From contig NW_018479939.1 of assembly GCF_002113885.1 (NCBI RefSeq), positions 1 to 64,000 on the forward strand: DNA of 64,000 nucleotides. Reading direction: 5' to 3'. A model generated the notes under the pieces. The model was given only the letters and a program-made list of their open reading frames with translations, was not told the origin of the DNA and ran no database searches. Of this stretch, positions 2,477-62,925 are shown one piece after another. Source of the stretch: Mizuhopecten yessoensis (lineage: Eukaryota). Position 1 is the first letter of the stretch. Every line of letters begins with the position of its first letter. The translations under genes were made by a program, and so were the position numbers.

Positions 2477-2600
2477 CAGGGGTTCGTTACAAATGTCTGA
2501 AATACACATATTCTATAGACCTACTGACACATATGTTACAGACCTACTGATATGAGTCACAGCACACATACACATTTCAGACATTTGTAACGAACCTGTG
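2477..2600. mobile_element. Short MITE-like inverted-repeat element
   Basis: Perfect 23-bp inverted repeat ggttcgttacaaatgtctgaaat (2481-2503) / atttcagacatttgtaacgaacc (2574-2596). Right end is cctgtg. No clear TSD. Confidence 0.6.
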
Positions 2601-3939
2601 CTCCGTCGCAAGTTCACTCACTTCAAACGCTATCAGTTTCACGGGTCTCGCATCTACGGTTCCTCAGTTTAATTCTGTCTACAGGACAAATAACGAGGCT
2701 GTTATAGAAACTACCGACTGTTTTCAGGTTCCCATACAATCAACAAATAAATTCACGCCTGGATTCTTCACAAAATGAGCAAAGAGAAAAGTTCGAATAA
2801 ACTTCCAAAAATAACTCCCTCGTGGAGGGCAAGGTCGGATTCACGGTGTTCACAGTCCATGCGCGAAATTTGTTCCGGGGGAAAATCGAAACAATTTAAA
2901 ATCTAACTTTCAGCTCAGAGTTCTATGGATAAACTTGAATTACCCTATATATATATCATACGCAATTGTATTGATACTGAATTGGGGAATTAAATTAAAG
3001 TGTTTGTTAAAATTTCAAAGTACTACTTTGTTTGCCAATCAGCACGCGACAATACGCTGTTCAAACTATTGATCGAAATTGTGCGGACTGTCGATAAGGC
3101 GGGCATTTTTAATTTTAAATATAAATTATAAGTTAAAAAAAAACATAAGAGACAGAGAAAACGTAAATATAAGTATTGAACTGTTTTTGTATGGTATTTC
3201 TGATCTATTTGAATGACACATAGCGCGCATTATGGTGTTTGCTTGCAAAGCTGTGTCATTCAAATAGATCATACAAAAACAGTTCAATGCTTAAATAATA
3301 GCATCTATCTGTATCAATATGTCTAAATGTTCCGTCTACCTCTAAACATATGTCCATCTCTATTTTACTGTCTTCTCTTGACAATGGGTATACATGTTCA
3401 CGTTTGCCTGTTACAATACGTCTATTTATTAAATTTGCCAATAATAGAACGGTATTGGCAAGACTTATCAATAATTAATCTCGAGCTATTTGAGTTGTAT
3501 ACCGTACCTGATATTTGCTTATCAATATTAAATCGCATGACAGGGATTTTGGTCATTAACATCAGTCATGCCGTGTAAAATATTCATAGATGAAACAAGT
3601 TTTCGGTGTCAAATTTAGTTGTTATCAAAGCTCGTATCTTTTAGTACAATCTTTCATGTACGTTACTTTGTTCTAAGCGTGTCGAGGGACATCAAACAAG
3701 AAATCTCAGGGGTTTTAAAACACACGGCTTATAATTCGTTATAAATGGTCTTTTTGTTTTCTAATTACCAAAGCTCTGACATTAGGTTTTTTTAAATTAC
3801 GAACGTGTACATAGTGTAACGTTCACTGACCCACAATAGACGCTAGAGTGGAGAACTGTGTTAAAGTGTAGAGTGCAAAGGCCTAAAAAGACAGCAGTGT
3901 ACAAAATACAAACAACCGCACACACAAACATCAAGTACA

Positions 3940-6900: not shown

Positions 6901-8950
6901 TTTGAAGAAGTTGCATAACAGTGACGCATATTGATGCGGTATAAAACACAGTGACGCACATTGATACAGTGTAAAACATAGTGGCGCATATTGAAAAAGT
7001 GTACATCACAGTGATGCACATTGAACCAGATAACAACACTCTTTCACACAAGAAAACATTGTACAGTGGCATAAATTGGATCAGTTTTCATCACAGTGAC
7101 GCACATTGAAACAGTGTAAAACATAGTGGCGCATATTGAAGCAGTGTAAAACATAGTGGAGACCATTGAAGCAGTACAAAATATAGTGACACAGTGTACA
7201 TCACAGTGATGCAGATTGAAGCAGATAACAACACTCTTGCACACATGAAAACATTGTACAGTAGCATAAATTGGAGCAGTGTTCATCATAGTGACGCACA
7301 TTGAAGAAGTGTACATATTAGTGTCGCACATTGAAGAAGTTTCATAACAGTGACGCATATTGACGCTGTGTAAAACACAGTGACGCACATTGATACAGTG
7401 TAAAACATAGTGGCGCACATTGAAGAATTTGCATAACAGTGACGCATATTGATGCGGTATAAAACACAGTGACGCACATTGAAACAGTGTAAAACATAGT
7501 GGCGCATATTGAAGCAGTGTAAAACATAGTGGAGACCATTGAAGCAGTACAAAATATAGTGACACAGTGTACATCACAGTGATGCACATTGAAGCAGATA
7601 ACAACACTCTTTCACATATGAAAACATTGTTCAGTGGCATACATTGGAGCAGTGTTCATCACAGTGACGCACATTGAAGAAGTGTACATAACAGTGACGC
7701 ATATTGACGCGATGTAAAACACAGTGACGCACATTTAAACAGTGTAAAACATAGTGGCGGATATTGAAACAGTGTACATCACAGTGATGCACATTGAAGC
7801 AGTACAAAACAAAGTTATGCACATTGAAGCAGTTTATAACACAGTGACGCACATTGAAACAGTGTAAAACATAGTGGCGCATATTGAAACAGTGTAAAAC
7901 ATAGTGGCGCACATTGAAGCAGGGTAAAACATAGTGGCGCACATTGAAGCAGTACAAAACAAAGTTATGCACATTGAAGCAGTTTATAACACAGTAATGA
8001 GCATTGAAGCAGTGCACAACAAAACTACACTTATAGAGGCAGAGGACAACACCATAATGTACATTTAAGCAGTATGCATTGTACAACACAGTGTTATACA
8101 TAAAACCTCATTGTAGAGTGACGTAAATTATAAGTGTACGTAACACTGACGCACATTAAAGCAGTTTATAACACAGTGATGTACATATGAAGCAGTGTCA
8201 TACATAGAAACGTTATACGATTACGTATATTAAAGCAGTGTACATCACAGTGACGCAACATGTAGCAGTGCACAGCAGAGTGATGCAGATTGAGGCAATG
8301 TACAACACACTGTCACACATAAACACATTGTATTGTGACGTAAAATGAAGCAGTGTACGTCACAGTGATGCATCTTGAGGAAGTGTACAAACGATTGGTG
8401 TAACTTGAAGCAGTGTTAAACACAGTGACGAATATTGAAGCAGTGTAAAACTCAGTGACGCACATTGAAGCAGTGTAAAACATAGTGGTGCACATTGAAG
8501 CAGTGTAAAACATAGTGGTGCACATTGAAGCAGTATACAACACACGTTCACACATGAAAACATTGTACAGTGGCATAAATTGGAGCAGTGTTCATCACAG
8601 TGACGCACATTGAAGCAGTGTAAAACACGGTGACGCACATTGAAGCAGTGTAAAACATATTGGCGCATATTGAAGCAGTGTAAAACATAGTGGCGCACAT
8701 TGAAGCAGTACAAAACATAGTGATGCACATTGAAGCAGTTTATAACACAGTGATGCACATTGAAGCAGTGTAAAACATAGTGGAGAACATTGAAGCAGTA
8801 CAAAATATAGTGACGCAGATTGAAGCAGTTTGTAACATAGTGATGCATATTGAAGCAGTTTACAATACACTTTCACACATGAAAACATTGTACAGTGGCA
8901 TAAATTGAAGAAGTGTACAGAACAGTGTCGCACATTGAAGCAGTGTACAA
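3940..8950. repeat. Satellite A, 30-bp monomer (gcacattgaagcagtgtaaaacatagtggc) with irregular higher-order structure
   Basis: Monomer read directly. A marker variant acacatgaaaacattgtacagtggcataaattggag recurs about 10 times. The array gives 10-aa periodic spurious ORFs. Confidence 0.95.
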
Positions 8951-11900
8951 CACAGCGACGCACGAGGTAGATGTTTAGACTTAACCACAGCTACGTACAC
9001 TGAAACAGTGTCCAAAACAGCGACGCACGAGGAAGATGTTTCGACAACAACACAGCGACGCACACTGAAACAGTGTCCAACACAGCGACGTAACACAGCG
9101 ACGTACGAGGAAGATGTTTAGACTACAACACAGCGACGCACATTGAAGCAGTGTACAACACAGCGACGCAAAAGGAAGATGTTTAGACTGCAGCACAACT
9201 ATGTACACTAAAACAGTGTCCAAAACAGCGACGCACGAGGAAGATGTTTAGACAACAACACAGCGGCGCACACTGAAACAGTGTCCAACACAGCGACGGA
9301 CGAGGAAGATGGTTAGACTACAACACAGCGACTCACATTGAAGCAGTGTACAACACATCGACGTACTAGGAAGATGTTTAGACCATAACAAAGTTACGCA
9401 TACTAAACAGTGCACAACACAGCGACGTACGAGGAAGATGTTTAGACTTCAACACAGCGACGCACATTGAAGCAGTGTACAGTTGTGGGACCGCACAGCG
9501 CACCAAAAACGCACATTGAAGCAGTGTACAACACAGCGACGTACAAGGAAGATGTTTAGACCATAACAAAGTGACGTATACTAAACAGTGCACAACACAG
9601 CGACGTACGAGGAAGATGTTTAGACTACAACACAGCGACGCACATTGAAGCAGGGTACAACATAGCGACGCACGAGGTAGATGTTTAGACTACAGCACAG
9701 CTACGTACACTGAAACAGTGTCCAACACAGCGACGCACGAGGAAGATGTTAAGACTGCAGCACAGATACGTAAACTGAAACAGTGTACAACACAGCGACG
9801 CAAATTGAAGCAGTGTACAACACAGCGACGCACTAGGAAGATGTTCAGACCATAACAAAGTTACGTATTCTAAACAGTGCACAACACAGCGACGTACGAG
9901 GAAGATGTTTCGACTGTAGCACAGCAACGTACACTGAAACAGTGTACAATACAGCGAGGCACGAGGAAGATGATTAGACTGCAACACAGATACGTACACT
10001 GAAACAGTGTACAACGCAGCGACGCACATTGAAGCAGTGTACAACACAGCGACGTACTAGGAAGATGTTTAGACCATAACAAAGTGACGTATACTAAACA
10101 GTGCACAACACAGCGACGTACTAGGAAGATGTTTAGACCATAACAAAGTTACTTATACTAAACAGTGCACAACACAGCGACGTACGAGGAAGATGTTTAG
10201 ACTGCAACACAGCGACGCACGTTGAAGCAGGGTACAACACAGCGACGCACGAGGTAGATGTTTAGACTACAGCACAGCTACGTACACTGAAACAGTGTCC
10301 AACACAGCGACGCACGAGGAAGATGTTAAGACTGCAGCACAGATACGTCAACTGAAACAGTGTACAACACAGCGACGCAAATTGAAGCGGTGTACAACAC
10401 AGCGACGAACTAGGAAGATGTTCAGACCATAACAAAGTTACGAATTCTAAACAGTGCACAACACAGCGACGTACGAGGAAGATGTTTCGACTGTAGCACA
10501 GCAACGTACACTGAAACAGGGTCCAATACAGCGAGGCACGAGGAAGACGTTTAAACTGCAACATAGCTACGTACACTGAAACAGTGACAACACAACGACG
10601 CACTAGGAAGAAGTTTACACCATAAAACGTTAGTATACTAAACAGTACACAACACAGCGACGTACGAGGAACATGTTTCGACTGTAGCACAGCAACGTAC
10701 ACTGAAACAGTGTACAATACAGCAAGGCACGAGGAAGATGATTAGACTGCAACACAGATACGTACACTGAAACAGTGTACAACACAACGACGCACGAGGA
10801 AGATGTTTTAACAGCACCACAGAAACGTAGACTGAAACAGTGTACAATACAGCGATGCACGAGGAAGACGTTTAAACTGCAACACAGCTACGTACACTGA
10901 AACAGTGTACAACACAACGACGCACTAGGAAGATGTTTACACCATAAAAAGTTAGTATACTAAACAGTACACAACACAGCGACGTACGAGGAAGATGTTT
11001 AGACTACAACACAGCGACGTACATTGAAGCAGTGTATAATATAGCGACTCACTATGTAGATGTTTTGACACCACAGCTACGTACACTGAAACAGTGTTCA
11101 ACACAGCGACGCACGAGGAAGATGTTAAGCCTGCAGCACAGATACGTAAACTGAAACAGTGTACAACACAGCGGCGCAAATTGAACCAGTGTACAACACA
11201 GCGACGCACTAGGAAGATGTTTAGACCATAACAAAATTACGTATTCTAAACAGTGCACAACATAACGACGTACGAGGAAGATGTTTCGACTGTAGCACAG
11301 CAACGTACACTGAAACAGTGTACAACACAGCGACGCACATTGAAGGAGTGTACAACACAGCGACGCACTAGGAAGATGTTTCGACTGCAACACTGCTGCG
11401 TACACTGAAACAGTGTACAACACAACGACGCACGAGAAAGATGTTTAAACAGCACCACATCTACGTAGACTGAAACAGTGTACACTACAGCGACGTACTA
11501 GGAAGACGTTTAAACAGCACCACAGCTACGTACACTGAAACAGTATCCAACACAGCGACGTACACTGAAACAGTGTACAACACAACGACGCACGAGGAAG
11601 ATATTTCGACCATAAAAAGTTAGTATACTAAACAGTGCACAACACAGCGACGTACGAGGAAGATGTTTCGACTGTAGCACAGCAACGTACACTGAAACAG
11701 TGTCCAACATAGTGACGCACATTGAAGGAGTGTACAACTCAGCGACGCACGAGGAAGATGTTTAAACAGCACCACAGCTACGTACACTGAAACAGTGCCC
11801 AACACAGCGACGCACATTGAAGGGGTGTACAACACAGCGACGCACGAGGAAGAGGTTTAAACTGCAACACAGCTACGTACCCTGAAACAGTGTACAACAC

Positions 11901-12323
11901 AACGACGCCCGAGGAAGATGTTTTAACAGTACCACAGCTACGTAGAGATGTTTAGACTACAGCACAGCTACGTACACTGAAACAGTGGACAACACAGCGA
12001 CGCACATTGAAGGAGCGTACAACACAGCGACGCACGAGGAAGAGGTTTAAACTGCAACACAGCTACGTACCCTGAAACAGTGTACAACACAACGACGCAC
12101 TAGGAAGATATTTCGACCATAAAAAGTTAGTATACTAAACAGGGCACAACACAGCGACGTACGAGGAAGATGTTTCGACTGTAGCACAGCAACGTACACT
12201 GAAACAGTGTACAATACAGCGATGCACGAGGAAGACGTTTAAACTGCAACACAGCTACGTACACTGAAGCAGTGTCCAACACAGCGACGTACGAGTAAGA
12301 TGTTAAGCCTACAACACAGCGAC

Positions 12324-12860
12324 TGATTTCAAATCAATTTTATTGTATTCAAAAAAACACAATTGGATTAGGCTAGGGCATTGCCTATAAAAGCCCTTTC
12401 CAGAGAAAATACACACATTTCATACATTCATATATGCATATATATATAGAGAGAGAGTATTATAGAGAAGATGTAGCATATGTTCGAAATAATAGGAGAA
12501 TACTAGAACCATTTAATACATGTTCACAGAAAATAATACATGTAACTAGAATATCATAGATTTTACCATTTCAATTAATATAGTCTATTTACTTCAATTA
12601 TTAATAGCCTAGTGTTTGATTGGAGGCACTTCAAAGACACTGTCACTATACACAGTGCCATCCCTCCCAATTACACCAGAGTTATTGTTATAACATACCA
12701 AATACAAACACATTGTAATATAATTTTTAGAATAGTTTAAGTTAAAATCTTCCAGATTTGTAAATAAACTCCGGAACACATGAGATAATAAATTTATTTG
12801 ATTCACTGCTAAGGGTCATATCACCCTTAGTGAAAGTAACAGTATTGAAGATGATGTTGT
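12324..12860 (-). mobile_element. 5'-truncated non-LTR retrotransposon (CR1/L2-group) 3' end inserted in satellite, copy 1
   Basis: Minus strand reads NIIFNTVTFTKGDMTLSSESNKFIISCVPEFIYKSGRF* (stop 12742-12744), resembling the G..L....N.......FI..S.RF* ORF2 C-terminus. The 3' UTR ends AATAAAattgatttgaaatca. A 12-bp TSD caacacagcgac lies at 12312-12323 and 12861-12872. Confidence 0.75.
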
Positions 12861-15800
12861 CAACACAGCGACACACATTGAAGCAGTGCACAACACAGCG
12901 ACACACGAGGAAGATGTTTAGACTGCAGCACAGCTACGCACATTGAAGCAGTGCACAACACAGCGACGTAAGGGAAAGATTTTTAGACTACAACACAGCT
13001 ATGCACACTGAAACAGTGTTCAACACAGTGACGCACGAGGAAGATGTTTAGACTATAACACAGCGACGCACATTGAAGCAGTGTACAACACAGCGACGTA
13101 AGGGAAAGATGTTTAGACTACAACACAGCTATGCACACTGAAGCAGTGTACAACACAGCGACGTACTAGGAAGATGTTTTGACTACAACACAGCTTCTTA
13201 CACTGAAACTGTGTCCAACACAGCGACGCACGAGGAAGATATAGGGACTATATCACAGCGACTCACATTGAAGCAGTGTACAACACAGCGACGTAGTAGG
13301 AACATGTTTAGATTATAACACAGCTTCGCACATTGAAGTAGTGTACAACACAGCGACGTACGGGAATGATTTTTAGACTACAACACAGCGACGCACATTG
13401 AAACAGTGTCCAACACAGCGACGTACTAGGAAGATGTTTATGCTACAACACAGCTATGCACACTGAAACAGTGTCCAACACAGCGACGCACGGGGAAGAT
13501 GTTTAGACTATAACACAGCTTCGCACATTGAAGTAGTGTACAACACAGCGACGTACGGGAATGATTTTTAGACTACAACACAGCGACGCACATTGAAACA
13601 GTGTCCAACACAGCGACGTACTAGGAAGATGTTTATACTACAACACAGCTATGCACACTGAAACAGTGTCCAACACAGCGACGCACGAGGAAGATGTATA
13701 GACTATATCACAGCGACTCACATTGAAGCATTGTACAACACAGCGACGCAATAGGAAGATGTTTAGACCATAACAAAATTACGTATTCTCAACAGTGCAC
13801 AACATAACGACGTACAAGGAAGATGTTTCGACTGTAGCACAGCAACGTACACTGAATCAGTGTACAATACAGCGACACACGAGGAAGATGTTTAGACTGC
13901 AGCACAGATACGTACAATGAAACAGTGTACAACACAGCGACGCACATTGAAGGAGTGTACAACACAGCGACGCACTAGGAAAATGTTTCGACTGCAACAC
14001 TGCTGCGTACACTGAAACAGTGTACAACACAACGACGCACGAGGAAGATGATTAAACAGCACCACATCTACGTAGACTGAAACAGTGTTCACTACGGCAA
14101 TGCACGAGGAAGACGTTTACACTGCAACAGAGCTACGTACACTGAAACAGTGTCCAACACAGCGACGTACTAGGAAGATAGATGTTTAGACTACACCACA
14201 GCTACGTACACTGAAACAGTGTCAAACACAGCGACGCACATTGAAGGAGTGTACAACACAGCGACGCACTAGGAAAATGTTTCGACTGCAACACTGCTGC
14301 GTACACTGAAACAGTGTACAACACAACGACGCACGAGGAAGATGTTTCGACCATAAAAAGTTAGTATACTAAACAGTGCACAACACAGCGACGTCCGAGG
14401 AAGATGTTAAGACTACAACACAGCGACGTACATTGAAGCAGTGTATACTATAGCGACTCCCTAGGTAGATGTTTAGACTACACCACAGCTACGTACACTT
14501 AAACAGTGTCCAACACAGCGACGCACATTGAAGGAGTGTACAACACAGCGACGCACGAGGAAACAGTGTACAATACAGCGATGCACGAGGAAGACGTTTA
14601 AACTGCAACACAGCTACGTACACTGAAACTGTGTCCAACACAGCGACGTACTAGGAAGATGTTTAGACCATAAAAAGTTAGTATACTAAACAGTGCACAA
14701 CACAGCGACGTACGAGGAAAATGTTTAGATGACAACACAGCGACGTACATTGAAGCAGTGTATAATATAGCGACTCACTAGGTAGATATTTAGACTACAC
14801 CACAGCTACGTACACTGAAACAGTGTCCAACACGGCGACGCACATTGAAGGAGTGTACAACACAGCGACGCACGAGGAAGATGTTTAGACTGCAGCACAG
14901 ATACGTACACTGAAACAGTGTACAACACAGCTACGTAGACTGAAACAGTGTACAATACAACGATGCACGAGGAAGACGTTTAAACTGCAGCACAGATACG
15001 TACACTGAAACAGTGTAACACAGCGACGCACATTGAAGGAGTGTACAACACAGCGACGCACTAGGAAGATGTTTCGACTGCAACACTGCTGCGTACACTG
15101 TAACAGTGTACAACACAACGACGCACGAGGAAGATGTTTAAACAGCACCACATCTACGTAGACTGAAACAGTGTACACTACAGCAATGCACGAGGAAGAC
15201 GTTTAAACTGCAACACAGCTACGTACACTGAAACAGTGTCCAACACAGCGACCTACTAGGAAGATGTTTCGACCATAAAAAGTTAGTATACTAAACAGTG
15301 CACAACACAGCGACGTACGAGGAAGATGTTTAGACTACAACACAGCGACGTACATTGAAGCAGTGTATCACATAGCGACTCACTAGGTAGATGTTTAGAC
15401 TACACCACACCCACCTAAACTGAAAGAGTGTCCAACACAGCGACGTACATTGAAGCAGTGTATAACATAGCGACTCACTAGGTAGATGTTTAGACTACAC
15501 CACAGCCACCTACACTGAAAGAGTGTCCAACACAGCGACGTACATTGAAGCAGTGTATAACATAGCGACTCCCTAGGTAGATGTTTAGACTACACCACAG
15601 CTACGTACACTGAAACAGTACACAACACAGCGACGTACGAGGAAGATGTTTAGACTACAACACAGCGACGTACATTGAAGCAGTGTATAACATAGCGACT
15701 CACTAGGTAGATGTTTAGACTACACCACATCTACCTACACTGAAACAGTGTCCAACACAGCGACGCACATTGAAGGAGTGTACAACACAGCGACGCACGA

Positions 15801-16346
15801 GGAAGAGGTTTAAACTGCAACACAGCTACGTACACTGAAACAGTGTACAACACAACGACGCACGAGAAAGATGTTTTAACAGCACCACAGCTACGTAGAC
15901 TGAAACAGTGTACAATACAGCGATGCACGAGGAAGACGTTTAAACTGCAACACAGCTACGTACACTGAAACAGTGTACACTACAGCGATGCACGAGGAAG
16001 ACGCTTAAACTGCAACACAGCGACGTACATTGAAGCAGTGTATACTATAGCGACTCACTAGGTAGATGTTTAGACTACACCACAGCTACGTACACTGAAA
16101 CAGTGTCCAACACAGCGACGTACTAGGAACATGTTTCGACCATAAACAGTTAGTATACTAAACAGTGCACAACACAGCGACGTACGAGGAAGATGTTTAG
16201 ACTATAACACAGCGACGTACATTGAAGCAGTGTATAACATAGCGACTCACTAGGTAGATGTTAAGATTACACCACAGCTACGTACACTGAAACAGTGTCC
16301 AACACAGCGACGTACGAGTAAGATGTTAAGCCTACAACACAGTGAC

Positions 16347-16885
16347 TGATTTCAAATCAATTTTATTGTATTCAAAAAATCACAATTGGGTTAGGCTAGG
16401 GCATTGCCTATAAAAGCCCTTTCCAGAGAAAATACACACATTTCATACATTCATATATGCATATATATATATAGAGAGAGAGTATTATAGAGAAGATGTA
16501 GTATATGTTCGAAATAATAGGAGAATACTAGAACCATTTAATACATGTTCACAGTAAATAATACATGTAACTAGAATATCATAGATTTTACCATTTCAAT
16601 TAATATAGTCTATTTTCTTCAATTATTAATAGCCTAGTGTTTGATTGGAGGCACTTCAAAGAAACTGTCACTATACACAGTGCCATCCCTCCCAATTACA
16701 CCAGAGTTATTGTTATAACATACCAAATACAAACACATTGTAATATAATTTTTAGAATAGTTTAAGTTAAAATCTTCCAGATTTGTCAATAAACTCCAGA
16801 ACACATGAGAGAATAAATTTATTTGATTCACTGCTAAGGGTCATATCACCCTTAGTGAAAGTAACAGTATTTAAGATGATGTTGT
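16347..16885 (-). mobile_element. Same truncated LINE, copy 2 (co-duplicated with flanking satellite)
   Basis: Near-identical to 12324-12860 with the same truncation point and flanks. Translates ...CVLEFIDKSGRF*. Confidence 0.75.
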
Positions 16886-17443
16886 CAACACAGCGACGCA
16901 CATTGAAGCAGTGCACAACACAGCGACACACGAGGAAGATGTTTAGACTGCAGCACAGCTACGCACATTGAAGCAGTGTACAACACAGCGAGGTACGGGA
17001 AAGATGTTTAGACTACAACACAGCGACGCACATTGAAGCAGTGTACAACACAGCGACGTAAGGGAAAGATGTTTAGACTACAACACAGCTATGCACACTG
17101 AACCAGTGTCCAACACAGCGACGCACGAGGAAGATGTTTAGACTATAACACAGCGACGCACATTGAAGCAGTGTACAACACAGCGACGTAAGGGAAAGAT
17201 GTTAAGACTACAACACAGCTATGCACACTGAAACAGTGTCCAACACAGCGACGTACTAGGAAGATGTTTAGACTACAACACAGCTTCTTACACTGAAACT
17301 GTGTCCAACACAGCGCCGCTCGAGGAAGATATAGGGACTATATCACAGCGACTCACATTGAAGAAGTGTACAACACAGCGACGTAGTAGTAACATGTTTT
17401 GACTACAACACAGCTTCGCACATTGAAGCAGTTTACAACACAG

Positions 17444-17597
17444 CGACGAAAGGGAAAGATGTTAAGACTACAACACAGCTATGCACACTGAAACAGTGTG
17501 CATAGCTGTGTTGTAGTCTTAACATCTTTCCCTTACGTCGCACATCTTCCTCGTGCGTCGCTGTGTTGGACACTATCTCAGTGTACGTCGCTGTGTT
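17444..17597. repeat. Fold-back palindrome plus inverted satellite segment
   Basis: 47-bp arms (17444-17490 / 17494-17540, 1 mismatch) around an aaa loop, followed by ~55 bp of reverse-complement satellite. Confidence 0.9.
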
Positions 17598-20500
17598 TAG
17601 ACTACAACACAGCGACGCACATTGAAGCAGTGTACAGCACAGCGATGTGCTAGGAAGATGTTTAGACTACAACACAGCTTCTTACACTGAAACTGTGTCC
17701 AACACAGCGACGCTCGAGGAAGATATAGGGACTATATCACAGCGACTCACATTGAAGCAGTGTACAACACAGTAACGTACGGGAATGATTTTTAGACTAC
17801 AACACAGCGACGCACGTTGAAGCAGTGTACAGCACAGCGATGTGCTTGGAAGATGTTTAGACTACAACACCGCGACGCACATTGAAGCAGTGTACAACAC
17901 AGTAACGTACGGGATTGATTTTTAGACTACAACACAGCGCCGTACACTGAGATAGTGTCCAACAAAGCGACGCACGAGGAAGATGTTTAGACTACAACAC
18001 AGCGACGCACATTGAAGCAGTGTACAGCACAGCGACGTTCTAGGAAGATGTTTAGACTATATCACAGCGACGTACACTGAGATAGTGTCCAACACAGCGA
18101 CGCACGAGGAAGATGTTTAGATTACAACACAGCGACGCACATTGAAGCAGTGTACAACACAGCGACGTACTAGGAAGATGTTTATACTACAACACAGCTA
18201 TGCACACTGAAACAGTGTCCAACACAGCGACGCACGAGGAAGATGTTTAGACTATAACACAGCGACGGACATTGAAGCAGTGTACAGCACAGTGACGTGC
18301 TAGGAAGATGTTTAGACTACAACACAGCTACTTACACTGAAACTGTGTCCAACACAGCGACGCACGAGGAAGATGTTTAGACTATATCACAGTGACTCAC
18401 ATTGAAGCAGTGTACAACACAGCGACGCACTAGGAAGATGTTTAGACCATAACAAAATTACGTAGTCTAAACAGTGCACAACATAACGACGTACAAGGAA
18501 TATGTTTCGACTGTAGCACAGCAACGTACACTGAAACGGTGTACAATACAGCGACGCATGAGGAAGATGTTTAGACTGCAGCACAGATACGTACACTGAA
18601 ACAGTGTACAACACAGCGACGCACTAGGAAGATGTTTAAACAGCACCACATCTACGTAGACTGAAACAGTGCACACTACAGCGATGCACGAGGAAGACGT
18701 TTAAACTGCAACACAGCTACGTACTCGGAAACAGTGTCCAACACTGCGACGTACTAGGAAGATGTTTCGACCATAAACAGTTAGTATACTAAACAGTGCA
18801 CAACTCAGCGACGTACGAGGAAGATGTTTAGACTACAACACAGCGAGATACATTGAAGCAGTGTATAACATAGCGACTCACTAGGTAGATGTTTAGACTA
18901 CACCACAGCTACGTACACTGAAACAGTGCACAACACAGCGACGTACGAGGAAGATGTTTAGACTACAACACAGCGAGATACATTGAAGCAGTGTATAACA
19001 TAGCGACTCACTAGGTAGAAGTTTAGACTACACCACAGCTACGTACACTGAAACAGGGTACAACACAGCGACGCACATTGAAGCAGTGTCCAACACAGCG
19101 ACGTACTAGGAAGATATTTATACCATAAAAAGTTAGTATACTAAACAGTGCACAACACAGCGACGTACGAGGAAGATGTTTAGACTACACCACAGCTACG
19201 TACACTGAAACAGTGTACAACACAGCTACGTAGACTGAAACAGTGTACAATACAGCGATGCACGAGGAAGACGTTTAAACTTCAACACAGCTACGTACAC
19301 TGAAACAGTGTCCAACACAGCGACGTACTAGGAAGATATTTAGACCATAAAAAGTTAGTATACTAAACAGTGCACAACACAGCGACGTACAAGGAAGATG
19401 TTTAGACTATATCACAGCGACTCACATTGAGGCAGTGTACAACACAGCGACGTAGTAGGAACATGTTTAGACTACAACACAGCTTCGCACATTGAAGCAG
19501 TGTACAACACAGCGACGTACGGGAAAGATTTGCAGACTACAACCCAGCGACGTACACTGAAATAGTGTCCAACACAGCGACGCACGAGGAAGATGTTTAT
19601 GCTAAATAAAAATACGGATGCTAGAAAGCAACTGATATGCCCTCCTGAACAAAGGTTTTCCATTATAATTCGTTTGCTGACCAATACTGCTGGATGGCTG
19701 CTCGACACTCGATCTCTAGTTTTATCCTTTTCTCTGCTTGTAGACTGATGCACGAGTGAGATTTTATACCTGGTTCTATGCAATGAATTCAGAATAAAAA
19801 TATTTATTGATTTTTTTTTTATCTTTTCCAGAAGTTCTACTTGAACACAATTATTGCATTATTCACCTAAGATTTTCAAACATCATTCGATTTGTATCAT
19901 TTATTCAGTGATACTAATTGTAGATAGTCAATGCTAATAGCTTAAAGTAAAACCGAGGAATCTGAACGGTCGATATTAATTTTATAAAATCCGGTTTCGC
20001 GATACAATTTATAAGTCATAGATAAAAGTAAAATAATCAAAGGCCCATCGTCATTAAAGTGTCATAATTTTTCTATAAGAGAAATAGGGGAAGGACTGTT
20101 GCTAATTAGGTAAAATTGAGCGAGATCAAAGAGAAATAGACAATATGGAGATCCCGAAGATAATCGATATTTACAATGACAGTTGTGAGGAATGAACATG
20201 ATGACCTTCATTAGCATTACTTATGCAGAGTTCCAGTCACTCTCAGCATTCAGGTATAATGTGAACGTTGAAATGTAGGAGACGAAGATACCATTTTGTT
20301 TGCAACTGGGTTAACCATTCATTTCGATATTTTTACGTTCGCTTATCAATCCGATTAAACAACAATCTCTGTTGATATTTTGCATCCCAACGAACACAAT
20401 GCAATGTTAATATCGGTATTCTCCTGATGACAGTATACTATGCCTATATACGCCCCTTTGTGATAACAAATAAGGTCTATATTAATCATGTATAGTAATT

Positions 20501-30560: not shown

Positions 30561-31514
30561 AGTATAGCTAACTTATATACCGAAGTCGTTCCCCACATTA
30601 CGTCCAAAGTACACAATTTACTGACAAACTAGAAATAGAGGCATAAGTCCTGCGTCCAGAGCGAGTTTAGGTGTGCAGTTTATTTGAAATGTCAGTCTTT
30701 CTATAGATAATATGTATTAAAAAACAAATCAATAATCGAAGCTATACATAGATGTATGATGTCAAGGCGGGTCACAGGGCGCCATTACTAAAACGAACCA
30801 ATGTGAGGTTGGTCGCTAGCCGGACAGTTAATGGCAGTTGTGCGACTGTGTTTTATACGTTATCAACGTATAATACTAAGGTCGGTTATATGAAATTAGT
30901 CAAAGCTGGTTGTTTCTCTAATATAAATAAGATATGTAAAATAAAATTATTATCAGATTTTTTTAATAAGTACATTGTATAAGAGAATGACTGTGTTTTG
31001 TTCATGTTTAAATCAGAGGCATCGGATGGTCTGATCAGGGCGGATACAAGATTTATTTAGGATGTTGCCAAAACATGATTTAGCTACGAGTTTTCTTGCT
31101 TAGGAATTGGCAAAAAATTAAAGGCCCTATCCTATTTTCTGTCATCATATTATAAGGATTGATTTATGGGGAATATATGCGGCTGATTATAGGGGAGACC
31201 GGGGCAAGTTCGGTCCCAGGGTAAGTCGGGTTGGGGCAAGTTCAGCCCTTGCAGTATATAAAAGTCGTGAAATTGGCAGGAAAACATGACGTCGCATTCT
31301 CAATTATGCTGATTCCAACGAGGGCCCTTCTTACTCAAGTCTGCCTGTCCGAACTTTCCCAAAGGCAAGTCATTCAATCTTCAAGCAGAAAAGGCTGAAT
31401 AATTCTTCAAATGTGGACATGTTAGCTCTTTTGTTAACATTTTATGAAAAGCATAGCATGTCTTTTCAAAACGTGTGTTTATGCACATACATTTCAAGAT
31501 ATTCCATAAGGTCA

Positions 31515-31862
31515 GCCTGCTGTTGACGATAAACCTCTATACAGCCCAGCCTGTTGTTGGCGATAAACCTGTATACAGACCAGCCTATTGTTGACGATAA
31601 ACCTCTATACAGCCCAGCCAGTTGTTGGCGATAAACCTCTATCCAGGCCAGCCTATTGTTGGCGATAACCCTCTATACAGCCCAGCCTGTTGGTGGCGAT
31701 AAACCTCCATACAGCCCAGCCTATTGTTGGCGATAAACCTCCATACACCCCAGCCTGTTGTTGGCGATAAACCTGTATACAGACCAGCCTATTGTTGGCG
31801 ATAAACCTCCATACAGCCCAGTCTGTTGTTGGCGATAAACCTCCATACAGCCCAGTCTGTTG
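31515..31862. repeat. Minisatellite, 34-bp unit, ~10 copies
   Basis: agcccagcctgttgttggcgataaacctctatac in tandem. Confidence 0.95.
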
Positions 31863-32356: not shown

Positions 32357-32395
32357 AAGATACAAATAACAAAACCTGTCTTACTGATTTCAACT

Positions 32396-32401
32396 TTTAT
32401 T
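32396..32401 (-). terminator. Polyadenylation signal AATAAA of the secreted-protein gene
   Basis: AATAAA about 220 nt downstream of the stop codon. Confidence 0.6.
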
Positions 32402-32618
32402 TGATTTGCTGTGAAACTTTCTTGCATGAGATGTTTCACATGTTGTTACACTTGAAATTATTATTGTGACAATATGTAAGCACTTGTTCCATTGGTGTCG
32501 TCATGGCTAACGGGAGGTAATGTTGATAGCCTCTCGGAAGATAGATTGTTAATATTCTTTATAACCGATTAACCGAATGGACAATATCTTTCTCCGATTT
32601 TGAAGTGATTGTTATTTG

Positions 32619-33158
32619 TTAATTCCTTTTGCGATCTTTTCCACCTTTACCGACTTTATTATCTCCTCCATCACTCCCACCGTTTCCTCTCTTCCCATTT
32701 TCCCCTCCTTTACCATCTTCTCCATCTTTATCATCTGTTCCACTTTTCCCATCTTTCCCTCCTTTACCATTTTTCTCTTCTTTACCATCTTTCCCATCTT
32801 TACCTTTTTTCCCTCCTTTACGATCTTTTCCATCTGTATCATCTTTTACATCTTTATCATTTCCATCGTCGTTTCCATTTTTGTCGTCATCAGAATCATC
32901 ATCTTCACCAGAGCGAGGCCTATCAGTAGAGTTAGGTGATCCAGGTCTCGTTACAGGTTTCTCATCTTTAGGTTCCCCATCTTCAGTGTTTCCGACTTTA
33001 GTGTTTCCGTCTTCAGTGCTCCCATCTTCAGTGTTCTCATCCGGGACCTCAACATCTGGAATAGAGGGTCTTTCCTCAGTTTGCCGTCTTTTTCTATTTG
33101 GTCTCGCTTGAGCCGACACGATCAGGCATAGTACTATGGTAAGCAGTATCACTCTCAT
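32619..33158 (-). CDS. Secreted 179-aa low-complexity protein: signal peptide, RKRR site, acidic domain, Gly-X-Y-like GKD domain (candidate shell-matrix/extracellular structural protein)
   Basis: MRVILLTIVLCLIVSAQA signal peptide. The splice acceptor tcttttattttacAG (AG at 33167-33166) lies 7 nt before the ATG, so the track's upstream 21 aa are intronic. The frame is intact, and an upstream exon, TATA box and polyA signal are all present. Confidence 0.85.
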   Translation of the reverse strand: MRVILLTIVLCLIVSAQARPNRKRRQTEERPSIPDVEVPDENTEDGSTEDGNTKVGNTEDGEPKDEKPVTRPGSPNSTDRPRSGEDDDSDDDKNGNDDGNDKDVKDDTDGKDRKGGKKGKDGKDGKEEKNGKGGKDGKSGTDDKDGEDGKGGENGKRGNGGSDGGDNKVGKGGKDRKRN

Positions 33159-34616
33159 CTTGTTTCTGTAAAATAAAAGATATAACACGTTTGGTACCAT
33201 CCAAATGAGCGATATTTTCATGATTATTCAAATTGAAAATAAAATATTCATGCTCGTGGATTCAACGTTATCACTTTCTCATTATATATGTAAAATACGA
33301 TATAATTATAGCTGGGGGACCGCTCCGTAAGAACCCCAAACTGTCCCACAAGTATATACAAAACACGATAGTACCCCAAATGTCACCATAGTATTTACAG
33401 AACAAGATCTATTTCAAAAGGGACTGTTACGAAAGTCCCCAAACCTGCCATTTTAATAATAAAAAAACATGCATCGGAAAGACCTTACGATGTCATGATA
33501 CGTCTACATATCAAAATTGGACAATATTTAGATTTCGATCTAACCAATCAACAGCTAGTTTACGTGGGCCACCTGTTTATATCAGGAAACTGGACCAGCT
33601 CGAGCAATTTGGAACAATTTTTAAATTTTGACCAATCAGTGGACTTGGTAAACATGTTTGCTGCATGTGCGATTGCAAAATAAAATGACGAATGCACATT
33701 CAGGCTTGCCAATCAATACTCAGGTAAATTTTCATGTTATCCTACCTCAATTACAATGAAAACAATTTCACTTATTTTAATCATTTTAGGCACTATAAAG
33801 ATCTATTTAGAATGACTTTTTTCTGATCATCTCATACAATAACCACATAAGTACATAATTCTAATTACTAACGAAAAATATTGCACAAAATAAATCCTGG
33901 TCCCCTCATACAATATACACAAAACTATCAGTTTTCGGTCACTTTCATACAACACACATTTACAAATATATCCTCTCTCAAGAGTGTACGAACAAAATTA
34001 CTCATCTCTGTACACCTCATAAAACACACACACCTAATTTCAAATCTACTTCCCCTAAGAAGTACATAAACAATATTACTAAGTTTTGGTCACCTCAAGC
34101 AGTGTATGCAAACAGTAAATGTAAATGTGCATTTTATTATTACATCAACTGTGTAATTCACAAAAATTTAAATACATTAATTAAGCCTACGATTTTCGAT
34201 ACAGATATGTTCACTGAACACATAGACACATGACGGCATTGTTGAGATAACAAAAAAATATTTAATCGGTTTCAGTATAAAATTCCATGTTATATTTTAT
34301 AGATATATATATTTTACCTTAGAATGGTCATTTAAAATGTTTAAAGACATACATTTTTTAAGTTTTAATTAGATTGAAAACAACAGTGGTTCGAAATTAA
34401 TCTTCTTGAGTGATCATGCTACTGAAACTTGAACAAATGTAATATTTTATATACACGATGTTTTACTAATTGTAAATTTTCATATTCATATTAGGATCTT
34501 AAGTTAAAATGAAAACATGAAAACATGATGAATAGACACGAGATGGAGATTTCTTTAACAATAAACATCTATGCAGGTGGTTTTTGTCCGGAAATACACG
34601 TTTAACTCTATCTTAC

Positions 34617-34740
34617 CTTATCTGTTGGGTGCTGCTTCGTCTGTGGTTCGCGCTACCTCGAGTTTGTTAGTGGACGCAATCTGGTCTGTGACTGTTGGTC
34701 GCTGCTTTGTCTGTGTTAAGCGGTAGCGTTGCTCTGTACA
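34617..34740 (-). other. Non-coding exon 1 (5' UTR) of the secreted-protein gene; intron 33166-34616
   Basis: GC-richer block ending cagataag|GTAAGA (consensus donor), starting about 30 nt downstream of the TATA box. Confidence 0.7.
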
Positions 34741-34762: not shown

Positions 34763-34769
34763 TTTTATA
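34763..34769 (-). promoter_or_regulatory. TATA box (TATAAAA)
   Basis: gggTATAAAAgac, correctly spaced before exon 1 and conserved in the paralogous copy at ~25681-25688. Confidence 0.7.
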
Positions 34770-43505: not shown

Positions 43506-43514
43506 CTAAAATCA

Positions 43515-44902
43515 GAAAACAATAGAACATCATAAATAATCACAAAACAATAGACCATCATAAATAATCATGAAACAATAGACAATCATAAATGATCACA
43601 AAACAATAGACCTCCATAAATAATCACAATACAATAGACCATCATAAATGATAATAAAACAATAGACCACCATAAATAATCACAAAAAAAATAACCACCA
43701 AAAATAATCACAAAACAAAAGGCAATCATAAATAATCATGAAACAATAAATAATCACAAAACAAAAGACCACAATAAATAATCACAAAACAATACCCAAT
43801 CATATACAATCACAAAACAATAGACCACCATAAATAATCACAATACAATAGACCATCATAAATAATAATAAATCAATAGAACCACCATAAATTATCACAA
43901 AACAATAGACAATCATATACAATCACAAAACAATAGGCAACCCTAAATAATCACAAAAAATAAACCACCAGAAGTAATCACAAAACAATAGGCAATTATA
44001 AATAATCATGAAACAATAAATAATCATAAAACAATAGACCACCATAAATTATCACAAAACAATAAACAATCATATATAATCACAAAACAATAGACCACCA
44101 TAAATAATCACAAAACAATAGACCATCATAAATAATCACAAAACAATAGAAAACCTTAAATAATCACAAAACAATAGACAATCATAAATAATTACAAAAT
44201 TATAGAAAATCTTAAATAATCACAAAAAAATAGACAATCATAAGTAATCACAAAACAATAGACAATCATAAATAATCATTAAACAATAGACAACCCTAAA
44301 TAATCACAAAACAATAGATCACCTTAAATAATCACAAAACAATAGACAACCATAAATAATCACAAAACAATAGCCAATCATAAATAATCACAAAACAATA
44401 GACCTTCATAAATAATCATTAAACAATAGACAACCCTAAATAATCACAAAACAATAGACAGCCCTAAATAATCACAAAACAATAGACCTTCATAAATAAT
44501 CACGAAACAATAGACAATCATAAATAATCACAAAACAATAAAAAACCTTAAATAATTACAAAACAATAGACAATCATAAGTAGTCACAACACAATAGACA
44601 ATCATAAATAATCATTAAACAATAGACAACCCTAAACAATCCCCAAATAATAGACCACCTTAATTAATCACAAAACAATAGAAAATCATAAATAATCACA
44701 AAACAATAGACAACCCTAAATAATCACAAAACAATAGACAATCATAAGTAATCACAAAACAATATACTATCATAAATAATCATTAAACAATAGACAACCC
44801 TAAATAATCACAAAACAATAGACCACCTTAAATAATCACAAAACAATAGACAATCATAAATAATCATGAATCAATAGACAATCATAAGTAATCACAAAAC
44901 AT
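43515..44902. repeat. 28-bp minisatellite (duplicated BOLA3 last-intron repeat)
   Basis: acaaaacaatagacaatcataaataatc in tandem, more diverged than the 62003-62925 array. Confidence 0.95.
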
Positions 44903-51586: not shown

Positions 51587-51595
51587 CTAAAATCA

Positions 51596-52964
51596 GAAAA
51601 CAATAGAACATCATAAATAATCACAAAACAATAGACCATCATAAATAATCATGAAACAATAGACAATCATAAATGATAACAAAACAATAGACCTCCATAA
51701 ATAATCACAATACAATAGACCATTATAAATGATAATAAAACAATAGACCACCATAAATAATCACAAAAAAAATAACCACCAAAAATAATCACAAAACAAA
51801 AGGGAATCATAAATAATCATGAAACAATAAATAATCACAAAACAAAAGACCACAATAAATAATCACAAAACAATACCCAATCATATATAATCACAAAACA
51901 ATAGACCACCATAAATAATCACAATACAATAGACCATCATAAATAATAATAAAACAATAGAACCACCATAAATAATCACAAAACAATAGACAATCATATA
52001 CAATCACAAAACAATAGGCAACCCTAAATAATCACAAAAAAATAAACCACCAGAAGTAATCACAAAACAATAGGCAATTATAAATAATCATGAAACAATA
52101 AATAATCATAAAACAATAGACCACCATAAATTATCACAAAACAATAGACAATCATAAATAATCACAAAACAATAGAAAACCTTAAATAATTACAAAACAA
52201 TAAACAATCATCAGTAATCACAAAACAATAGACAATCATAAATAATCATTAAACAATAGACCATCATAAATAATCACAAAACAATAGAAAACCTTAAATA
52301 ATCACGAAACAATAGACAATCATAAATAATCACAAAACAATAGAAAACCTTAAATAATTACAATACAATATACAATCATAAGTAATCACAAAACAAAAGA
52401 CAATCATAAATAATCATTAAACAATAGACAACCCTAAATAATCACAAAACAATAGACCTTGATAAATAGTCACGAAACAATAGACAATCATAAATAATCA
52501 CAAAACAATAGAAAACCTTAAATAATTACAAAACAATAGACAATCATAAGTAGTCACAACACAATAGACAGCCCTAAATAATCATTAAACAATAGACAAC
52601 TCTAAATAATTACAAAACAATAGACAATCATAAGTAGTCACAACACAATAGACAATCATAAATAATCATTAAACAATAGACAACCCTAAATAATCACAAA
52701 ACAATAGACCTTGATAAATAGTCACGAAACAATAGACAATCATAAATAATCACAAAACAATAGAAAACCTTAAATAATTACAAAACAATAGACAATCATA
52801 AGTAGTCATGAGATCACAAAACAATAGACAATGATAAATAATCATTAAACAATAGACAACCCTAAATAATCACAAAACAATAGACCACCTTAAATAATCA
52901 CAAAACAATAGACAATCATAAATAATCATGAAACAATAGACAATCATAAGTAATCACAAAACAT
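51596..52964. repeat. 28-bp minisatellite, copy 2
   Basis: Same unit as 43515-44902. Confidence 0.95.
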
Positions 52965-61992: not shown

Positions 61993-62002
61993 CTAAAATC
62001 AG

Positions 62003-62925
62003 AAAACAATAGACCATCATAAATAATCACAAAACAATAGACCATCATAAATAATCATGAAACAATAGAAAATCATAAATAATCACAAAACAATAGACCA
62101 CCATAAATAATCACAAAACAATAGACCACCATATATAATTACAAAACAATAGAAAATTATAAATAATCACAAAACAATAGACCACCATAAGTTATCACAA
62201 AACAATAGACAATCATAAATAATCACAAAACAATAGACAATCATAAATAATCACAAAACAATAGACAATCATAAATAATCACAAAACAATAGACAATCAT
62301 AAATAATCACAAAACAATAGACAATCATAAATAATCACAAAACAATAGACAATCATAAATAATCACAAAACAATAGACAATCATAAATAATCACAAAACA
62401 ATAGACAATCATAAATAATCACAAAACAATAGACAATCATAAATAATCACAAAACAATAGACAATCATAAATAATCACAAAACAATAGACAATCATAAAT
62501 AATCACAAAACAATAGACAATCATAAATAATCACAAAACAATAGACAATCATAAATAATCACAAAACAATAGACCACCATAAATAATCACAAAACAATAG
62601 ACAATCATGAATAATCACAAAACAATAGACAATCATAAATAATCACAAAACAATAGACCACCATAAATAATCACAAAACAATAGACCACCATAAATAATT
62701 ACAAAACAATAGAAAATTATAAATAATCACAAAACAATAGACCACCATAAGTTATCACAAAACAATAGACAATCATAAATAATCACAAAACAATAGACAA
62801 CCCTAAATAATTACAAAACCATAGACAATCATAAATAATCACAAAACAATAGACAATCATAAATAATCACAAAACAATAGATAATCATAAATAATCACAA
62901 AACAATAGACCACCATAAATAATCA
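62003..62925. repeat. 28-bp minisatellite filling most of the BOLA3 last intron (61993-63077)
   Basis: Highly homogeneous central run of acaaaacaatagacaatcataaataatc. Confidence 0.95.

What the first reader, a model, noticed from the sequence alone, without database searches (positions are those of the whole stretch)
32619..33158. Orphan-like secreted protein with acidic block and proline-free collagen-like (Gly-Lys-Asp) tail
Seen: an 18-aa signal peptide, then RPNRKRR|Q (furin-type site exposing Gln, a possible pyroglutamate), four (N/S)TEDG-type pentapeptides and an Asp-rich stretch. These are followed by 22 triplets of which 18 start with Gly (GKD RKG GKK GKD GKD GKE EKN GKG GKD GKS GTD...). 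The mature protein has no Cys and no aromatic residues. Established: Asp-rich secreted low-complexity proteins typify mollusc shell matrix, and GKD-rich Pro-poor triple helices occur in bacterial collagen-like proteins. Inference: a lineage-specific biomineralisation, byssus or adhesive protein, possibly undescribed. I recognise no named family.
Basis: partly seen in the sequence, partly recalled or inferred. Interest (0 to 1): 0.72.

Follow-up and report, generated by a model that had tools for sequence, protein, structure and literature searches.

The report
Orphan secreted disordered scallop protein
This is a real, spliced and expressed scallop gene for a small secreted, floppy, highly charged protein; its collagen-like look comes from a short DNA repeat, its front end is shared with a small undescribed family of secreted-peptide genes, and its job is untested.

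Summary
The minus-strand ORF 33158..32619 encodes the 179-aa protein as described. RNA-like contigs from two studies carry exactly the predicted splice (34617>33165, GT..AG). They start about 45 nt after a TATA box and end 12 nt after an AATAAA.

- **Collagen tail: not supported.** Gly sits in one phase 18 times (0 of 20,000 shuffles match this). But the longest unbroken Gly-X-Y run is 7 triplets, Pfam Collagen scores 11 bits against a cut-off of 27, and the tail has no Pro. The periodicity comes from a decayed 9-bp (Asp-Gly-Lys) tandem repeat. Both structure predictions show only the signal helix.
- **Orphan: half right.** The body has no relative in 1.84 billion representative proteins, apart from compositional hits to microbial collagen repeats. 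The 5' module does have relatives. It comprises the intron end, splice acceptor, signal peptide and a conserved P-x-R-x-x-R convertase-type site, and eight other genes of this genome share it. One encodes a 377-aa acidic repeat protein. Seven encode clustered 64-70-aa precursors, four of which end in an amidation-type Gly.
- **Function: untested.** A shell-matrix, byssus or adhesive role was not tested here. The protein does not fit the known scallop byssal protein classes.

It is best read as a lineage-specific secreted polyampholyte built by repeat expansion on a family secretion module. Interest is modest.

The parts
34763..34769 (-). TATA box (TATAAAA)
   Evidence: Read directly. It lies about 40-45 nt upstream of the 5' end of the longest transcript contig, at 34723.
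34617..34723 (-). Exon 1, non-coding 5' UTR. This is the observed extent; the true start may lie up to about 20 nt further upstream.
   Evidence: X1 contig piece 34723-34617 and X2 piece 34698-34617 (table 8). The exon contains no ATG.
33166..34616 (-). Intron, 1451 nt, GT..AG
   Evidence: The joint 'skips 1451, CT..AC on +' is seen in X1 and X2 and is absent from the DNA run X15. The RNA-like runs give no depth over the intron apart from one 31-nt piece.
32384..33165 (-). Exon 2: 7 nt of 5' UTR, the whole CDS and a 235-nt 3' UTR
   Evidence: The contigs of X1, X2 and X13 all end at 32384/32385.
33107..33191 (-). Family-shared 5' module: the last ~26 nt of the intron, the acceptor, the ACAAG-ATG context and the signal peptide
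   Evidence: DNA matches in the window's own genome: 84% over 70 nt to C5525 and 75-79% to C5592 copies. Alignment A1.
32619..33158 (-). CDS, 179 codons plus TAA
   Evidence: The sense frame is open, and frame 0 of the same strand is full of stops.
33105..33158 (-). Signal peptide (residues 1-18)
   Evidence: It has an n-region (MR), a 13-residue hydrophobic core and A-Q-A before the cut, assigned by the -3/-1 rule; SignalP was not available. It is the only helix in the AF2 model, residues 2-16.
33084..33104 (-). RPNRKRR: a convertase-type R-x-[KR]-R site that would expose Gln26
   Evidence: P20, R22 and R25 are invariant in all six aligned family members. That cleavage occurs is an inference.
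32959..33041 (-). 15-bp tandem repeat, 5.5 copies, encoding NTEDG / STEDG / NTKVG / NTEDG / EPKDE
   Evidence: TRF; translation.
32832..32909 (-). Asp-rich block (residues 84-109, net charge -11)
32622..32831 (-). Gly-Lys-Asp tail (residues 110-179, net charge +7); a decayed 9/18/54-bp tandem repeat
   Evidence: TRF gives period 9, 17 copies, 66% matches. Gly is in phase 18 of 24 times and the longest unbroken run is 7.
32396..32401 (-). Poly(A) signal AATAAA
   Evidence: Read directly. It ends 12 nt upstream of the shared contig end at 32384.

Best explanation
This is a functional two-exon gene of the scallop genome. Its mRNA of about 0.9 kb encodes a 179-aa secreted protein.

After the 18-aa signal peptide is removed, a conserved R-x-x-R convertase-type site probably trims the heptapeptide RPNRKRR. 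That would leave a chain of about 16 kDa with pI about 4.6 and an N-terminal Gln that could become pyroglutamate.

The chain is intrinsically disordered. It consists of an acidic half (net -19) followed by a mixed-charge Gly-Lys-Asp half (net +7).

The body arose by slippage-type expansion of a 15-bp unit and a 9-bp unit downstream of a secretion module that the gene shares with eight paralogues. The Gly-every-third-residue pattern is a by-product of the 9-bp (Asp-Gly-Lys) unit and does not indicate a collagen triple helix.

Inferred mode of action: an extracellular, strongly hydrated polyampholyte that acts through charge, by binding cations or mineral surfaces or by association with oppositely charged matrix. 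An acid-soluble shell or mantle matrix component is the leading candidate, but this is untested.

The gene model, secretion signal, disorder, repeat origin and family link are shown here. Cleavage, pyroglutamate formation and the extracellular role are inferred.
For: - Splice, transcript ends and colinear DNA control.
- TATA box, poly(A) signal, first ATG and Kozak context.
- Single full-length copy in the genome, which rules out a retrocopy as the source of the joint.
- Held by 14 RNA-like runs from 7 studies at 0.89 or more of sampled words.
- Disorder: the ESM Atlas model has pLDDT 0.34 and pTM 0.11. The AF2 model has only helix 2-16 and pLDDT about 50 elsewhere.
- Repeat origin.
- Protein-level constraint: Gly codons vary at the third base (GGA 15, GGG 9, GGT 8) while Gly itself is kept, and only the sense frame is fully open.
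- Family module: HMM hits with E from 3e-13 to 3e-20 for nine genes; BLASTP 61% over 31 aa, E 4e-12, to the C1401 paralogue; DNA identity that runs into the intron end.
- Charge layout and pI.
- General knowledge: secreted, disordered, repetitive, duplicated genes typify biomineral matrix proteins (abstract of PMC4336488). Non-collagen Gly-X-Asn repeats occur in the shell protein nacrein (PMC4066178).
Against: - No tissue information: run identities are coded, so mantle or shell expression is unknown.
- No proteomic evidence.
- Its recognisable relatives are mostly small peptide-precursor-like genes, which points towards processed secretory peptides more than matrix.
- Asp content (19%) is well below that of classic Asp-rich shell proteins (my recollection, not checked here).
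- No orthologue could be sought in other scallop genomes with these tools, so conservation is unknown.
- Both structure predictions were made without an alignment.
Confidence: 0.5

Rival explanations
1. It is a prohormone-like or granin-like cargo of the regulated secretory pathway. The protein would be cut at its basic sites (RKRR, RK, KK, GKR, RKR) into an acidic spacer and Gly/Lys/Asp peptides, one of them amidated (…GGEN-amide). Alternatively it acts as an acidic granule-condensing protein.
For: - Four of the seven clustered C5592 paralogues have the classic layout of amidated-peptide precursors: signal, spacer, RVKR or RSKR, five or six residues, then Gly-stop.
- The R-x-x-R site directly after the signal peptide is invariant in the family.
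- The window protein has five basic-pair sites, one preceded by Gly.
- It has an acidic pI and is disordered, like granins (the comparison to granins is from my own knowledge).
Against: - There is no repeated or conserved candidate peptide between the basic sites, and only one Gly-Lys-Arg.
- Lys is so frequent (15.5%) that KK and RK pairs are expected by composition.
- Neither this signal peptide nor the C5592 motif occurs among the 63 ganglion neuropeptide precursors printed in the supplement of PMC5996578. The file does hold sequences. This check assumes the genome is the Yesso scallop.
Confidence: 0.2
2. It is a proline-free collagen-like triple-helical structural protein of byssus or adhesive.
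For: - Significant Gly phase, 18 of 24.
- Weak sequence hits to Pro-poor microbial collagen-like repeats of the GKDGxDG type, best E 2.7e-10.
- Pfam Collagen is the top, sub-threshold, match.
Against: - Five phase breaks in 23 triplets, and the longest unbroken run is 7. The 55 hits have a median longest run of 23, and 53 of them have runs of 13-84.
- Pfam scores 11.1 bits against a 27.2 cut-off.
- No PDB relative.
- No Pro in the tail, and no trimerisation domain.
Confidence: 0.04
3. It is a young, fast-evolving transcribed gene whose product has no selected function: a duplicated secretion module followed by drifting repeat DNA.
For: - No relative of the body anywhere.
- The body is made of decaying tandem repeats.
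- The gene sits alone in a satellite-rich, gene-poor stretch.
- Some family copies have lost their C-terminal peptide signal.
Against: - An intact 179-codon frame while another sense-strand frame is full of stops.
- Canonical TATA box, splice sites, Kozak context and poly(A) signal.
- Contigs identical to the window in RNA-like runs of three studies, and the stretch is held by runs of seven studies.
Confidence: 0.15

Closest known systems
Acidic, repetitive low-complexity shell matrix proteins of molluscs (e.g. scallop MSP-1, Aspein/Asprich; a class, not a homology family)
   Same: Signal peptide, acidic pI, an Asp-rich block, no folded domain, a body built from tandem repeats, lineage-restricted. 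The class description is from the abstract of PMC4336488 and my own knowledge.
   Different: No sequence similarity. Asp is only 19%. The protein is unusually rich in Lys, which makes it a polyampholyte and not a polyanion. No shell-proteome or mantle evidence exists.
Gly-X-Asn repeat domain of nacrein and nacrein-like proteins
   Same: A mollusc secreted protein with Gly at every third residue and acidic or amide residues between, which is not a collagen (PMC4066178).
   Different: In nacrein the repeat is inserted in a carbonic anhydrase domain. Here there is no enzyme domain, and Lys-Asp takes the place of X-Asn.
Bacterial and viral collagen-like proteins (Pfam PF01391; Pro-poor GKDGxDG repeats)
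   Same: Tripeptide composition of the Gly-Lys-Asp / Gly-x-Asp type. These proteins are the only database hits.
   Different: Fifty-three of the 55 hits have 13-84 unbroken triplets, usually with flanking folded domains. The window protein has at most 7. The similarity is confined to residues ~95-176 and is compositional.
Signal-sequence-defined secreted gene families (cone-snail toxin superfamilies; vertebrate SCPP genes such as caseins and enamel proteins)
   Same: A non-coding first exon, a conserved signal-peptide segment that starts the coding exon, and unrelated, fast-evolving mature parts in paralogues. The comparison is from my own knowledge.
   Different: No homology to either. The family here is small, with about 9-12 genes, and is seen only in this genome so far.
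Amidated neuropeptide precursors and granins
   Same: Signal peptide, acidic spacer and basic-pair sites. Four of the C5592 paralogues end in KR-x5-Gly.
   Different: The window protein has no repeated bioactive-peptide unit. It is absent from the published scallop ganglion precursor list.

Membership tests
Collagen triple-helix repeat (PF01391) | Profile score at or above the curated cut-off | tested here: not met
   11.1 bits against a cut-off of 27.2, E 0.34.
Collagen triple-helix repeat (PF01391) | A long uninterrupted Gly-X-Y run | tested here: not met
   The longest run is 7 triplets, with 5 breaks in 23 triplets. The 55 nearest hits have a median longest run of 23, and 53 of them have runs of 13-84.
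Collagen triple-helix repeat (PF01391) | Pro/Hyp in the X/Y positions, or a flanking trimerisation domain | tested here: not met
   No Pro in residues 110-179. No folded domain in the AF2 or ESM models.
Collagen triple-helix repeat (PF01391) | Physical triple-helix formation | not testable with these tools
   Needs circular dichroism and melting of the recombinant tail.
Scallop 'MRV-signal / P-x-R-x-x-R' secretion-module family (defined here) | Shared acceptor context, signal peptide and R-x-x-R site, shown homologous at protein and DNA level | tested here: met
   HMM E 6e-18 for the window gene; eight further genes score 3e-13 to 3e-20. BLASTP E 4e-12 to C1401. 75-84% DNA identity that includes the intron end.
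Acidic shell matrix proteins (functional class) | Secreted, acidic, repetitive low-complexity chain | tested here: met
   Signal peptide present; pI 4.6-4.9; DDDSDDD block; tandem repeats.
Acidic shell matrix proteins (functional class) | Present in shell extracts, or expressed in the mantle | not testable with these tools
   Run and tissue identities are coded. The sequence strings occur in no searchable paper.
Neuropeptide / prohormone precursor | Conserved or repeated peptide units flanked by basic pairs, with an amidation Gly | tested here: not met
   Five basic-pair sites but no repeated unit, and a single G-K-R.
Neuropeptide / prohormone precursor | Listed among precursors found in scallop ganglia | tested here: not met
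   The signal peptide and family motifs are absent from the precursor sequences in the supplement of PMC5996578. This is valid only if the genome is the Yesso scallop.
Scallop byssal proteins | EGF-like domains, Tyr-rich composition or 4C repeats | tested here: not met
   No Tyr or Cys in the mature chain and no EGF-like or other domain at Pfam's cut-off. The classes are as stated in PMC9168380.

The most novel reading that the evidence does not exclude
The shared module may mark a scallop-specific 'signal-sequence superfamily', comparable in logic to cone-snail toxin superfamilies. In it, one ancestral small peptide-precursor gene would have given rise both to a tandem array of amidated-pentapeptide precursors and, by repeat expansion, to long secreted polyampholytes (this gene and the C1401 gene). 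The non-collagen (Gly-Lys-Asp)n / Asp-block protein would then be a new type of charge-patterned extracellular material or calcite-regulating matrix component.
Probability: 0.15. Interest if true: 0.55.

Novelty: new member of a known kind. Interest (0 to 1): 0.33.

Why it matters
The gene adds a verified, expressed member to the large and poorly understood pool of lineage-specific secreted low-complexity proteins of bivalves.

It also shows concretely how such a protein arises: a duplicated secretion module followed by expansion of 9-bp and 15-bp units.

It is a caution that Gly-every-third-residue patterns can be a by-product of repeats and need not indicate collagen.

The link to a cluster of amidated-peptide-like precursor genes is new, as far as these searches reach. 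It gives a small family that could be tested by peptidomics and in situ hybridisation.

Nothing here bears on a long-standing open question.

Tried and rejected
**Searches for relatives or named families that found nothing usable**
- Word-index protein searches with the window protein, with residues 1-130 of the C1401 paralogue, and with an alignment of the C5592 precursors all found nothing.
- Full phmmer against 1.84 billion representatives gave only compositional hits to collagen repeats.
- Exact-sequence look-ups for the protein and three paralogues found nothing. Records of this genome appear to be withheld there, so this says nothing about novelty.
- PDB sequence search: no hit.
- ESM Atlas feature and structure neighbours all fall below meaningful scores.

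**Searches in the window's own genome**
- The promoter and exon 1 are unique.
- The DNA hits to the tail in C5405 and C76711 are unrelated simple repeats.
- The whole C1401 protein as a query was swamped by low-complexity matches.

**Leads tested and dropped**
I tested whether the C5592 precursor tails are related to them. The tail matched only the cluster itself.

**Literature**
- Five peptide strings of the family occur in no searchable paper.
- The four-species bivalve shell-proteome paper PMC5854119 gave no composition-class match.

**Limits of the evidence**
- Tissue of expression could not be obtained because runs and studies are coded.
- SignalP and ProP were not available. The signal cleavage and the furin site rest on the -3/-1 rule and the R-x-[KR]-R motif.

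Full report
**1. The observation**

On the minus strand, 33158..32619 is an open frame of 179 codons.

- MRVILLTIVLCLIVSAQA
- RPNRKRR followed by Q
- the pentapeptides NTEDG, STEDG, NTKVG, NTEDG
- an Asp block, GEDDDSDDDKNGNDDGNDKDVKDDTD
- a 70-residue Gly-Lys-Asp tail

Read as triplets, the tail gives 23 triplets plus a final Asn, and 18 of them start with Gly.

The chain after the signal peptide uses only 12 residue types. These include Gly 20%, Asp 19%, Lys 15.5%, Glu 9%, Asn 8% and Arg 7.5%. It has no Cys and no aromatic residues. Its pI is 4.9, or 4.6 after removal of RPNRKRR.

The Gly phase is not chance: none of 20,000 shuffles of the tail reaches 18 Gly in one phase.

**2. The gene model**

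- Contigs from two small-assembly runs of different studies (X1, X2) carry exactly this joint. It skips 1451 bases with CT..AC on the plus strand, which is GT..AG on the minus strand.
- In X1 a single 892-nt contig runs 34723-34617 and then 33165-32384.
- The runs are only guessed to be RNA. However, they give no depth over the intron and flanks apart from one 31-nt piece. The genome-sized DNA run X15 covers the whole stretch colinearly with no joint.
- The genome holds only one full-length copy, so a retrocopy does not explain the joint.
- TATAAAA lies at 34769-34763, about 45 nt upstream of the contig start.
- AATAAA lies at 32401-32396, ending 12 nt before the end shared by three contigs.
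- Exon 1 has no ATG, so the ATG at 33158 (context AACAAGATGA) is the first in the mRNA.
- The longer 200-aa ORF listed begins inside the intron and is excluded.

The whole CDS lies in exon 2. Exons 1 and 2 were joined only inside a local script, to locate the first ATG.

The stretch is held at 0.89 or more of sampled words by 14 RNA-like runs from seven studies. It is absent from three other runs of the same samples or studies, one of them from a second organism. This suggests, but does not show, condition- or tissue-specific expression. Tissue names are coded, so the tissue is unknown.

**3. Coding evidence**

- Only the sense frame is fully open on exon 2. Frame 0 is full of stops.
- Gly codons vary freely at the third base (GGA 15, GGG 9, GGT 8) while Gly itself is kept. 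This is what constraint on the protein, as opposed to the DNA repeat, would give.

**4. What the 'collagen-like' tail is**

Tandem Repeats Finder shows the tail is a decayed array. It has a 9-bp period with 17 copies at 66% matches, and higher-order 18-, 36- and 54-bp periods. The unit encodes Asp-Gly-Lys. The pentapeptides come from a 15-bp unit with 5.5 copies. A 9-bp unit containing one Gly codon necessarily places Gly at every third residue.

Every testable collagen criterion fails:

- Pfam Collagen scores 11.1 bits against a cut-off of 27.2.
- The phase is broken five times, and the longest unbroken run is 7 triplets.
- The tail has no Pro.
- There is no folded domain that could nucleate a trimer. 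The ESM Atlas model has pLDDT 0.34. My AF2 model has one helix, the signal peptide (residues 2-16), and pLDDT about 50 elsewhere. Both were made without an alignment.
- The PDB sequence search finds nothing.

The exhaustive phmmer search of 1.84 billion representatives gave 55 weak hits, the best at E 2.7e-10. All are confined to residues ~95-176. The ones I read are microbial or viral proteins with strict GKDGxDG repeats. Across the 55 hits the longest unbroken runs have a median of 23, and 53 of them lie between 13 and 84. I read these hits as compositional and not as homology.

Mollusc shell proteins with non-collagen Gly-every-third repeats are known. An example is the Gly-X-Asn domain of nacrein-like proteins (PMC4066178).

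**5. Not a complete orphan: a shared secretion module**

The search of the window's own genome gave weak hits to residues 1-33. Following them up:

- A DNA alignment shows a shared acceptor (TTACAG), the short leader ACACAAG, ATGAGRGTG, the signal peptide and the following P-N-R-x-x-R.
- A profile of 35 residues finds nine clear genes, with E from 3e-13 to 3e-20. These are the window gene, one gene on C1401, and seven in a tandem cluster on C5592 at 2.28-2.40 Mb.
- More distant copies lie on C5525 and C2300. The signal peptide of the C5525 copy is 14 of 18 identical to the window's.
- At DNA level the window's 33176-33107 is 84% identical to C5525. The match to one C5592 copy runs 26 nt into the intron. 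This is descent by duplication, not convergence of signal peptides.
- P20, R22 and R25 are invariant, so a minimal convertase motif R-x-x-R directly after the signal peptide is a family feature.
- The promoter and exon 1 are not shared with any of these genes.

The closest paralogue is C1401:171457-172587. It encodes 377 aa and starts MRLILVAIVCTCLIVSTYG-RPSRERRQAEEK. That is 61% identity over 31 residues, E 4e-12. It continues as a different acidic Ala/Glu/Lys repeat protein.

The C5592 genes encode 64-70-aa precursors. Four of them end in RVKR or RSKR followed by RVFFMG, RGFLMG, SAFLFG or SSFRFG and a stop. This is the layout of amidated-peptide precursors. Three copies have lost that ending.

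No member of the family has a relative in the word-index database. None of the strings occurs in a searchable paper.

**6. The organism**

Notes of other agents in this scan call the genome the Yesso scallop. The assembly size and contig count agree with my recollection of that assembly. I did not verify this independently.

On that assumption I checked the published ganglion neuropeptide catalogue (PMC5996578). Its supplement prints the precursor sequences, and it contains neither the window's signal peptide nor the cluster's motif.

**7. How it most likely works**

Shown here:
- a secreted-type precursor
- a disordered, charge-segregated chain: residues 26-108 have net charge -19, and residues 110-179 have net +7
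- repeat-expansion origin
- membership of the secretion-module family

Inferred:
- signal cleavage after SAQA
- convertase trimming of RPNRKRR
- possible pyroglutamate formation at Gln26
- possible modification at one N-x-T sequon (Asn76) and two S-x-E sites

My best reading is an extracellular, strongly hydrated polyampholyte that acts through charge. Among candidate roles, I rate an acid-soluble shell or mantle matrix role the most likely, at roughly 0.3. This rests on the Asp block, the class features of biomineral matrix proteins (PMC4336488 abstract) and my recollection that convertase processing is known for shell proteins.

Rough probabilities for the alternatives:
- prohormone- or granin-like: 0.2, favoured by the nature of the paralogues
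- no selected function: 0.15
- true collagen-like fibre: under 0.05

A byssal role is unlikely. [quoted passage not shown]

**8. Novelty and verdict**

- The gene is real and its body is unique.
- The collagen label should be dropped.
- The family link is new as far as these searches reach.
- This is a new member of a known kind: a lineage-specific secreted repetitive low-complexity protein in a signal-defined gene family.
- Interest is modest.

Noticed in passing
G000:C5592:2282303-2400703 (loci L003, L006, L010, L011, L033, L034, L035): A tandem cluster of at least seven genes, each with one coding exon, for 64-70-aa secreted precursors. The layout is signal peptide, SPNRM[KE]R, a ~30-aa spacer, then RVKR or RSKR followed by RVFFMG, RGFLMG, SAFLFG or SSFRFG and a stop. 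This is an amidated-pentapeptide layout. The genes are absent from the published scallop ganglion neuropeptide list and have no database relatives. Three copies have lost the C-terminal signal.
   Followed up: partly
G000:C1401:171457-172587 (-), locus L002:469-1602: The closest paralogue of the window gene. It encodes a 377-aa secreted protein that starts RPSRERRQAEEK and has a 22-aa Ala/Glu/Lys repeat (EAKAEKDGAKAEAKEEKDGAKA) about eight times. The body has no relatives.
   Followed up: partly
G000:C5525:1093243 (+) and G000:C2300:305663 / 303559 (-) (loci L037-L039): More distant small precursors. In C5525 the signal peptide is 14 of 18 identical to the window gene's, with 84% DNA identity over 70 nt. 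They carry HNR[ND]KRSQ basic sites, and the C2300 copy ends …RPPIG-stop.
   Followed up: no
window 9-19599 and 41989-62925: The gene sits alone in satellite-rich DNA. There are 32/38-bp arrays at 9-2049, a 30-bp satellite at 4154-8963 and a 65-bp satellite at about 9092-19599. Arrays of 28 bp (43510-44901, 51591-52963, 61997-62925) and 81 bp recur at roughly 8-kb spacing, which suggests segmental repeats. The long 'ORFs' there are repeat artefacts.
   Followed up: no
window 34698 (-): One X2 contig carries 30 nt unlike the window upstream of 34698, inside exon 1. It may be an alternative 5' end or a chimeric contig (table 7).
   Followed up: no
window 31513-31862: A 34-bp tandem repeat, 10 copies at 88% matches, lies about 500 nt downstream of the gene's 3' end. 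The DNA run shows raised depth and several short contigs there.
   Followed up: no
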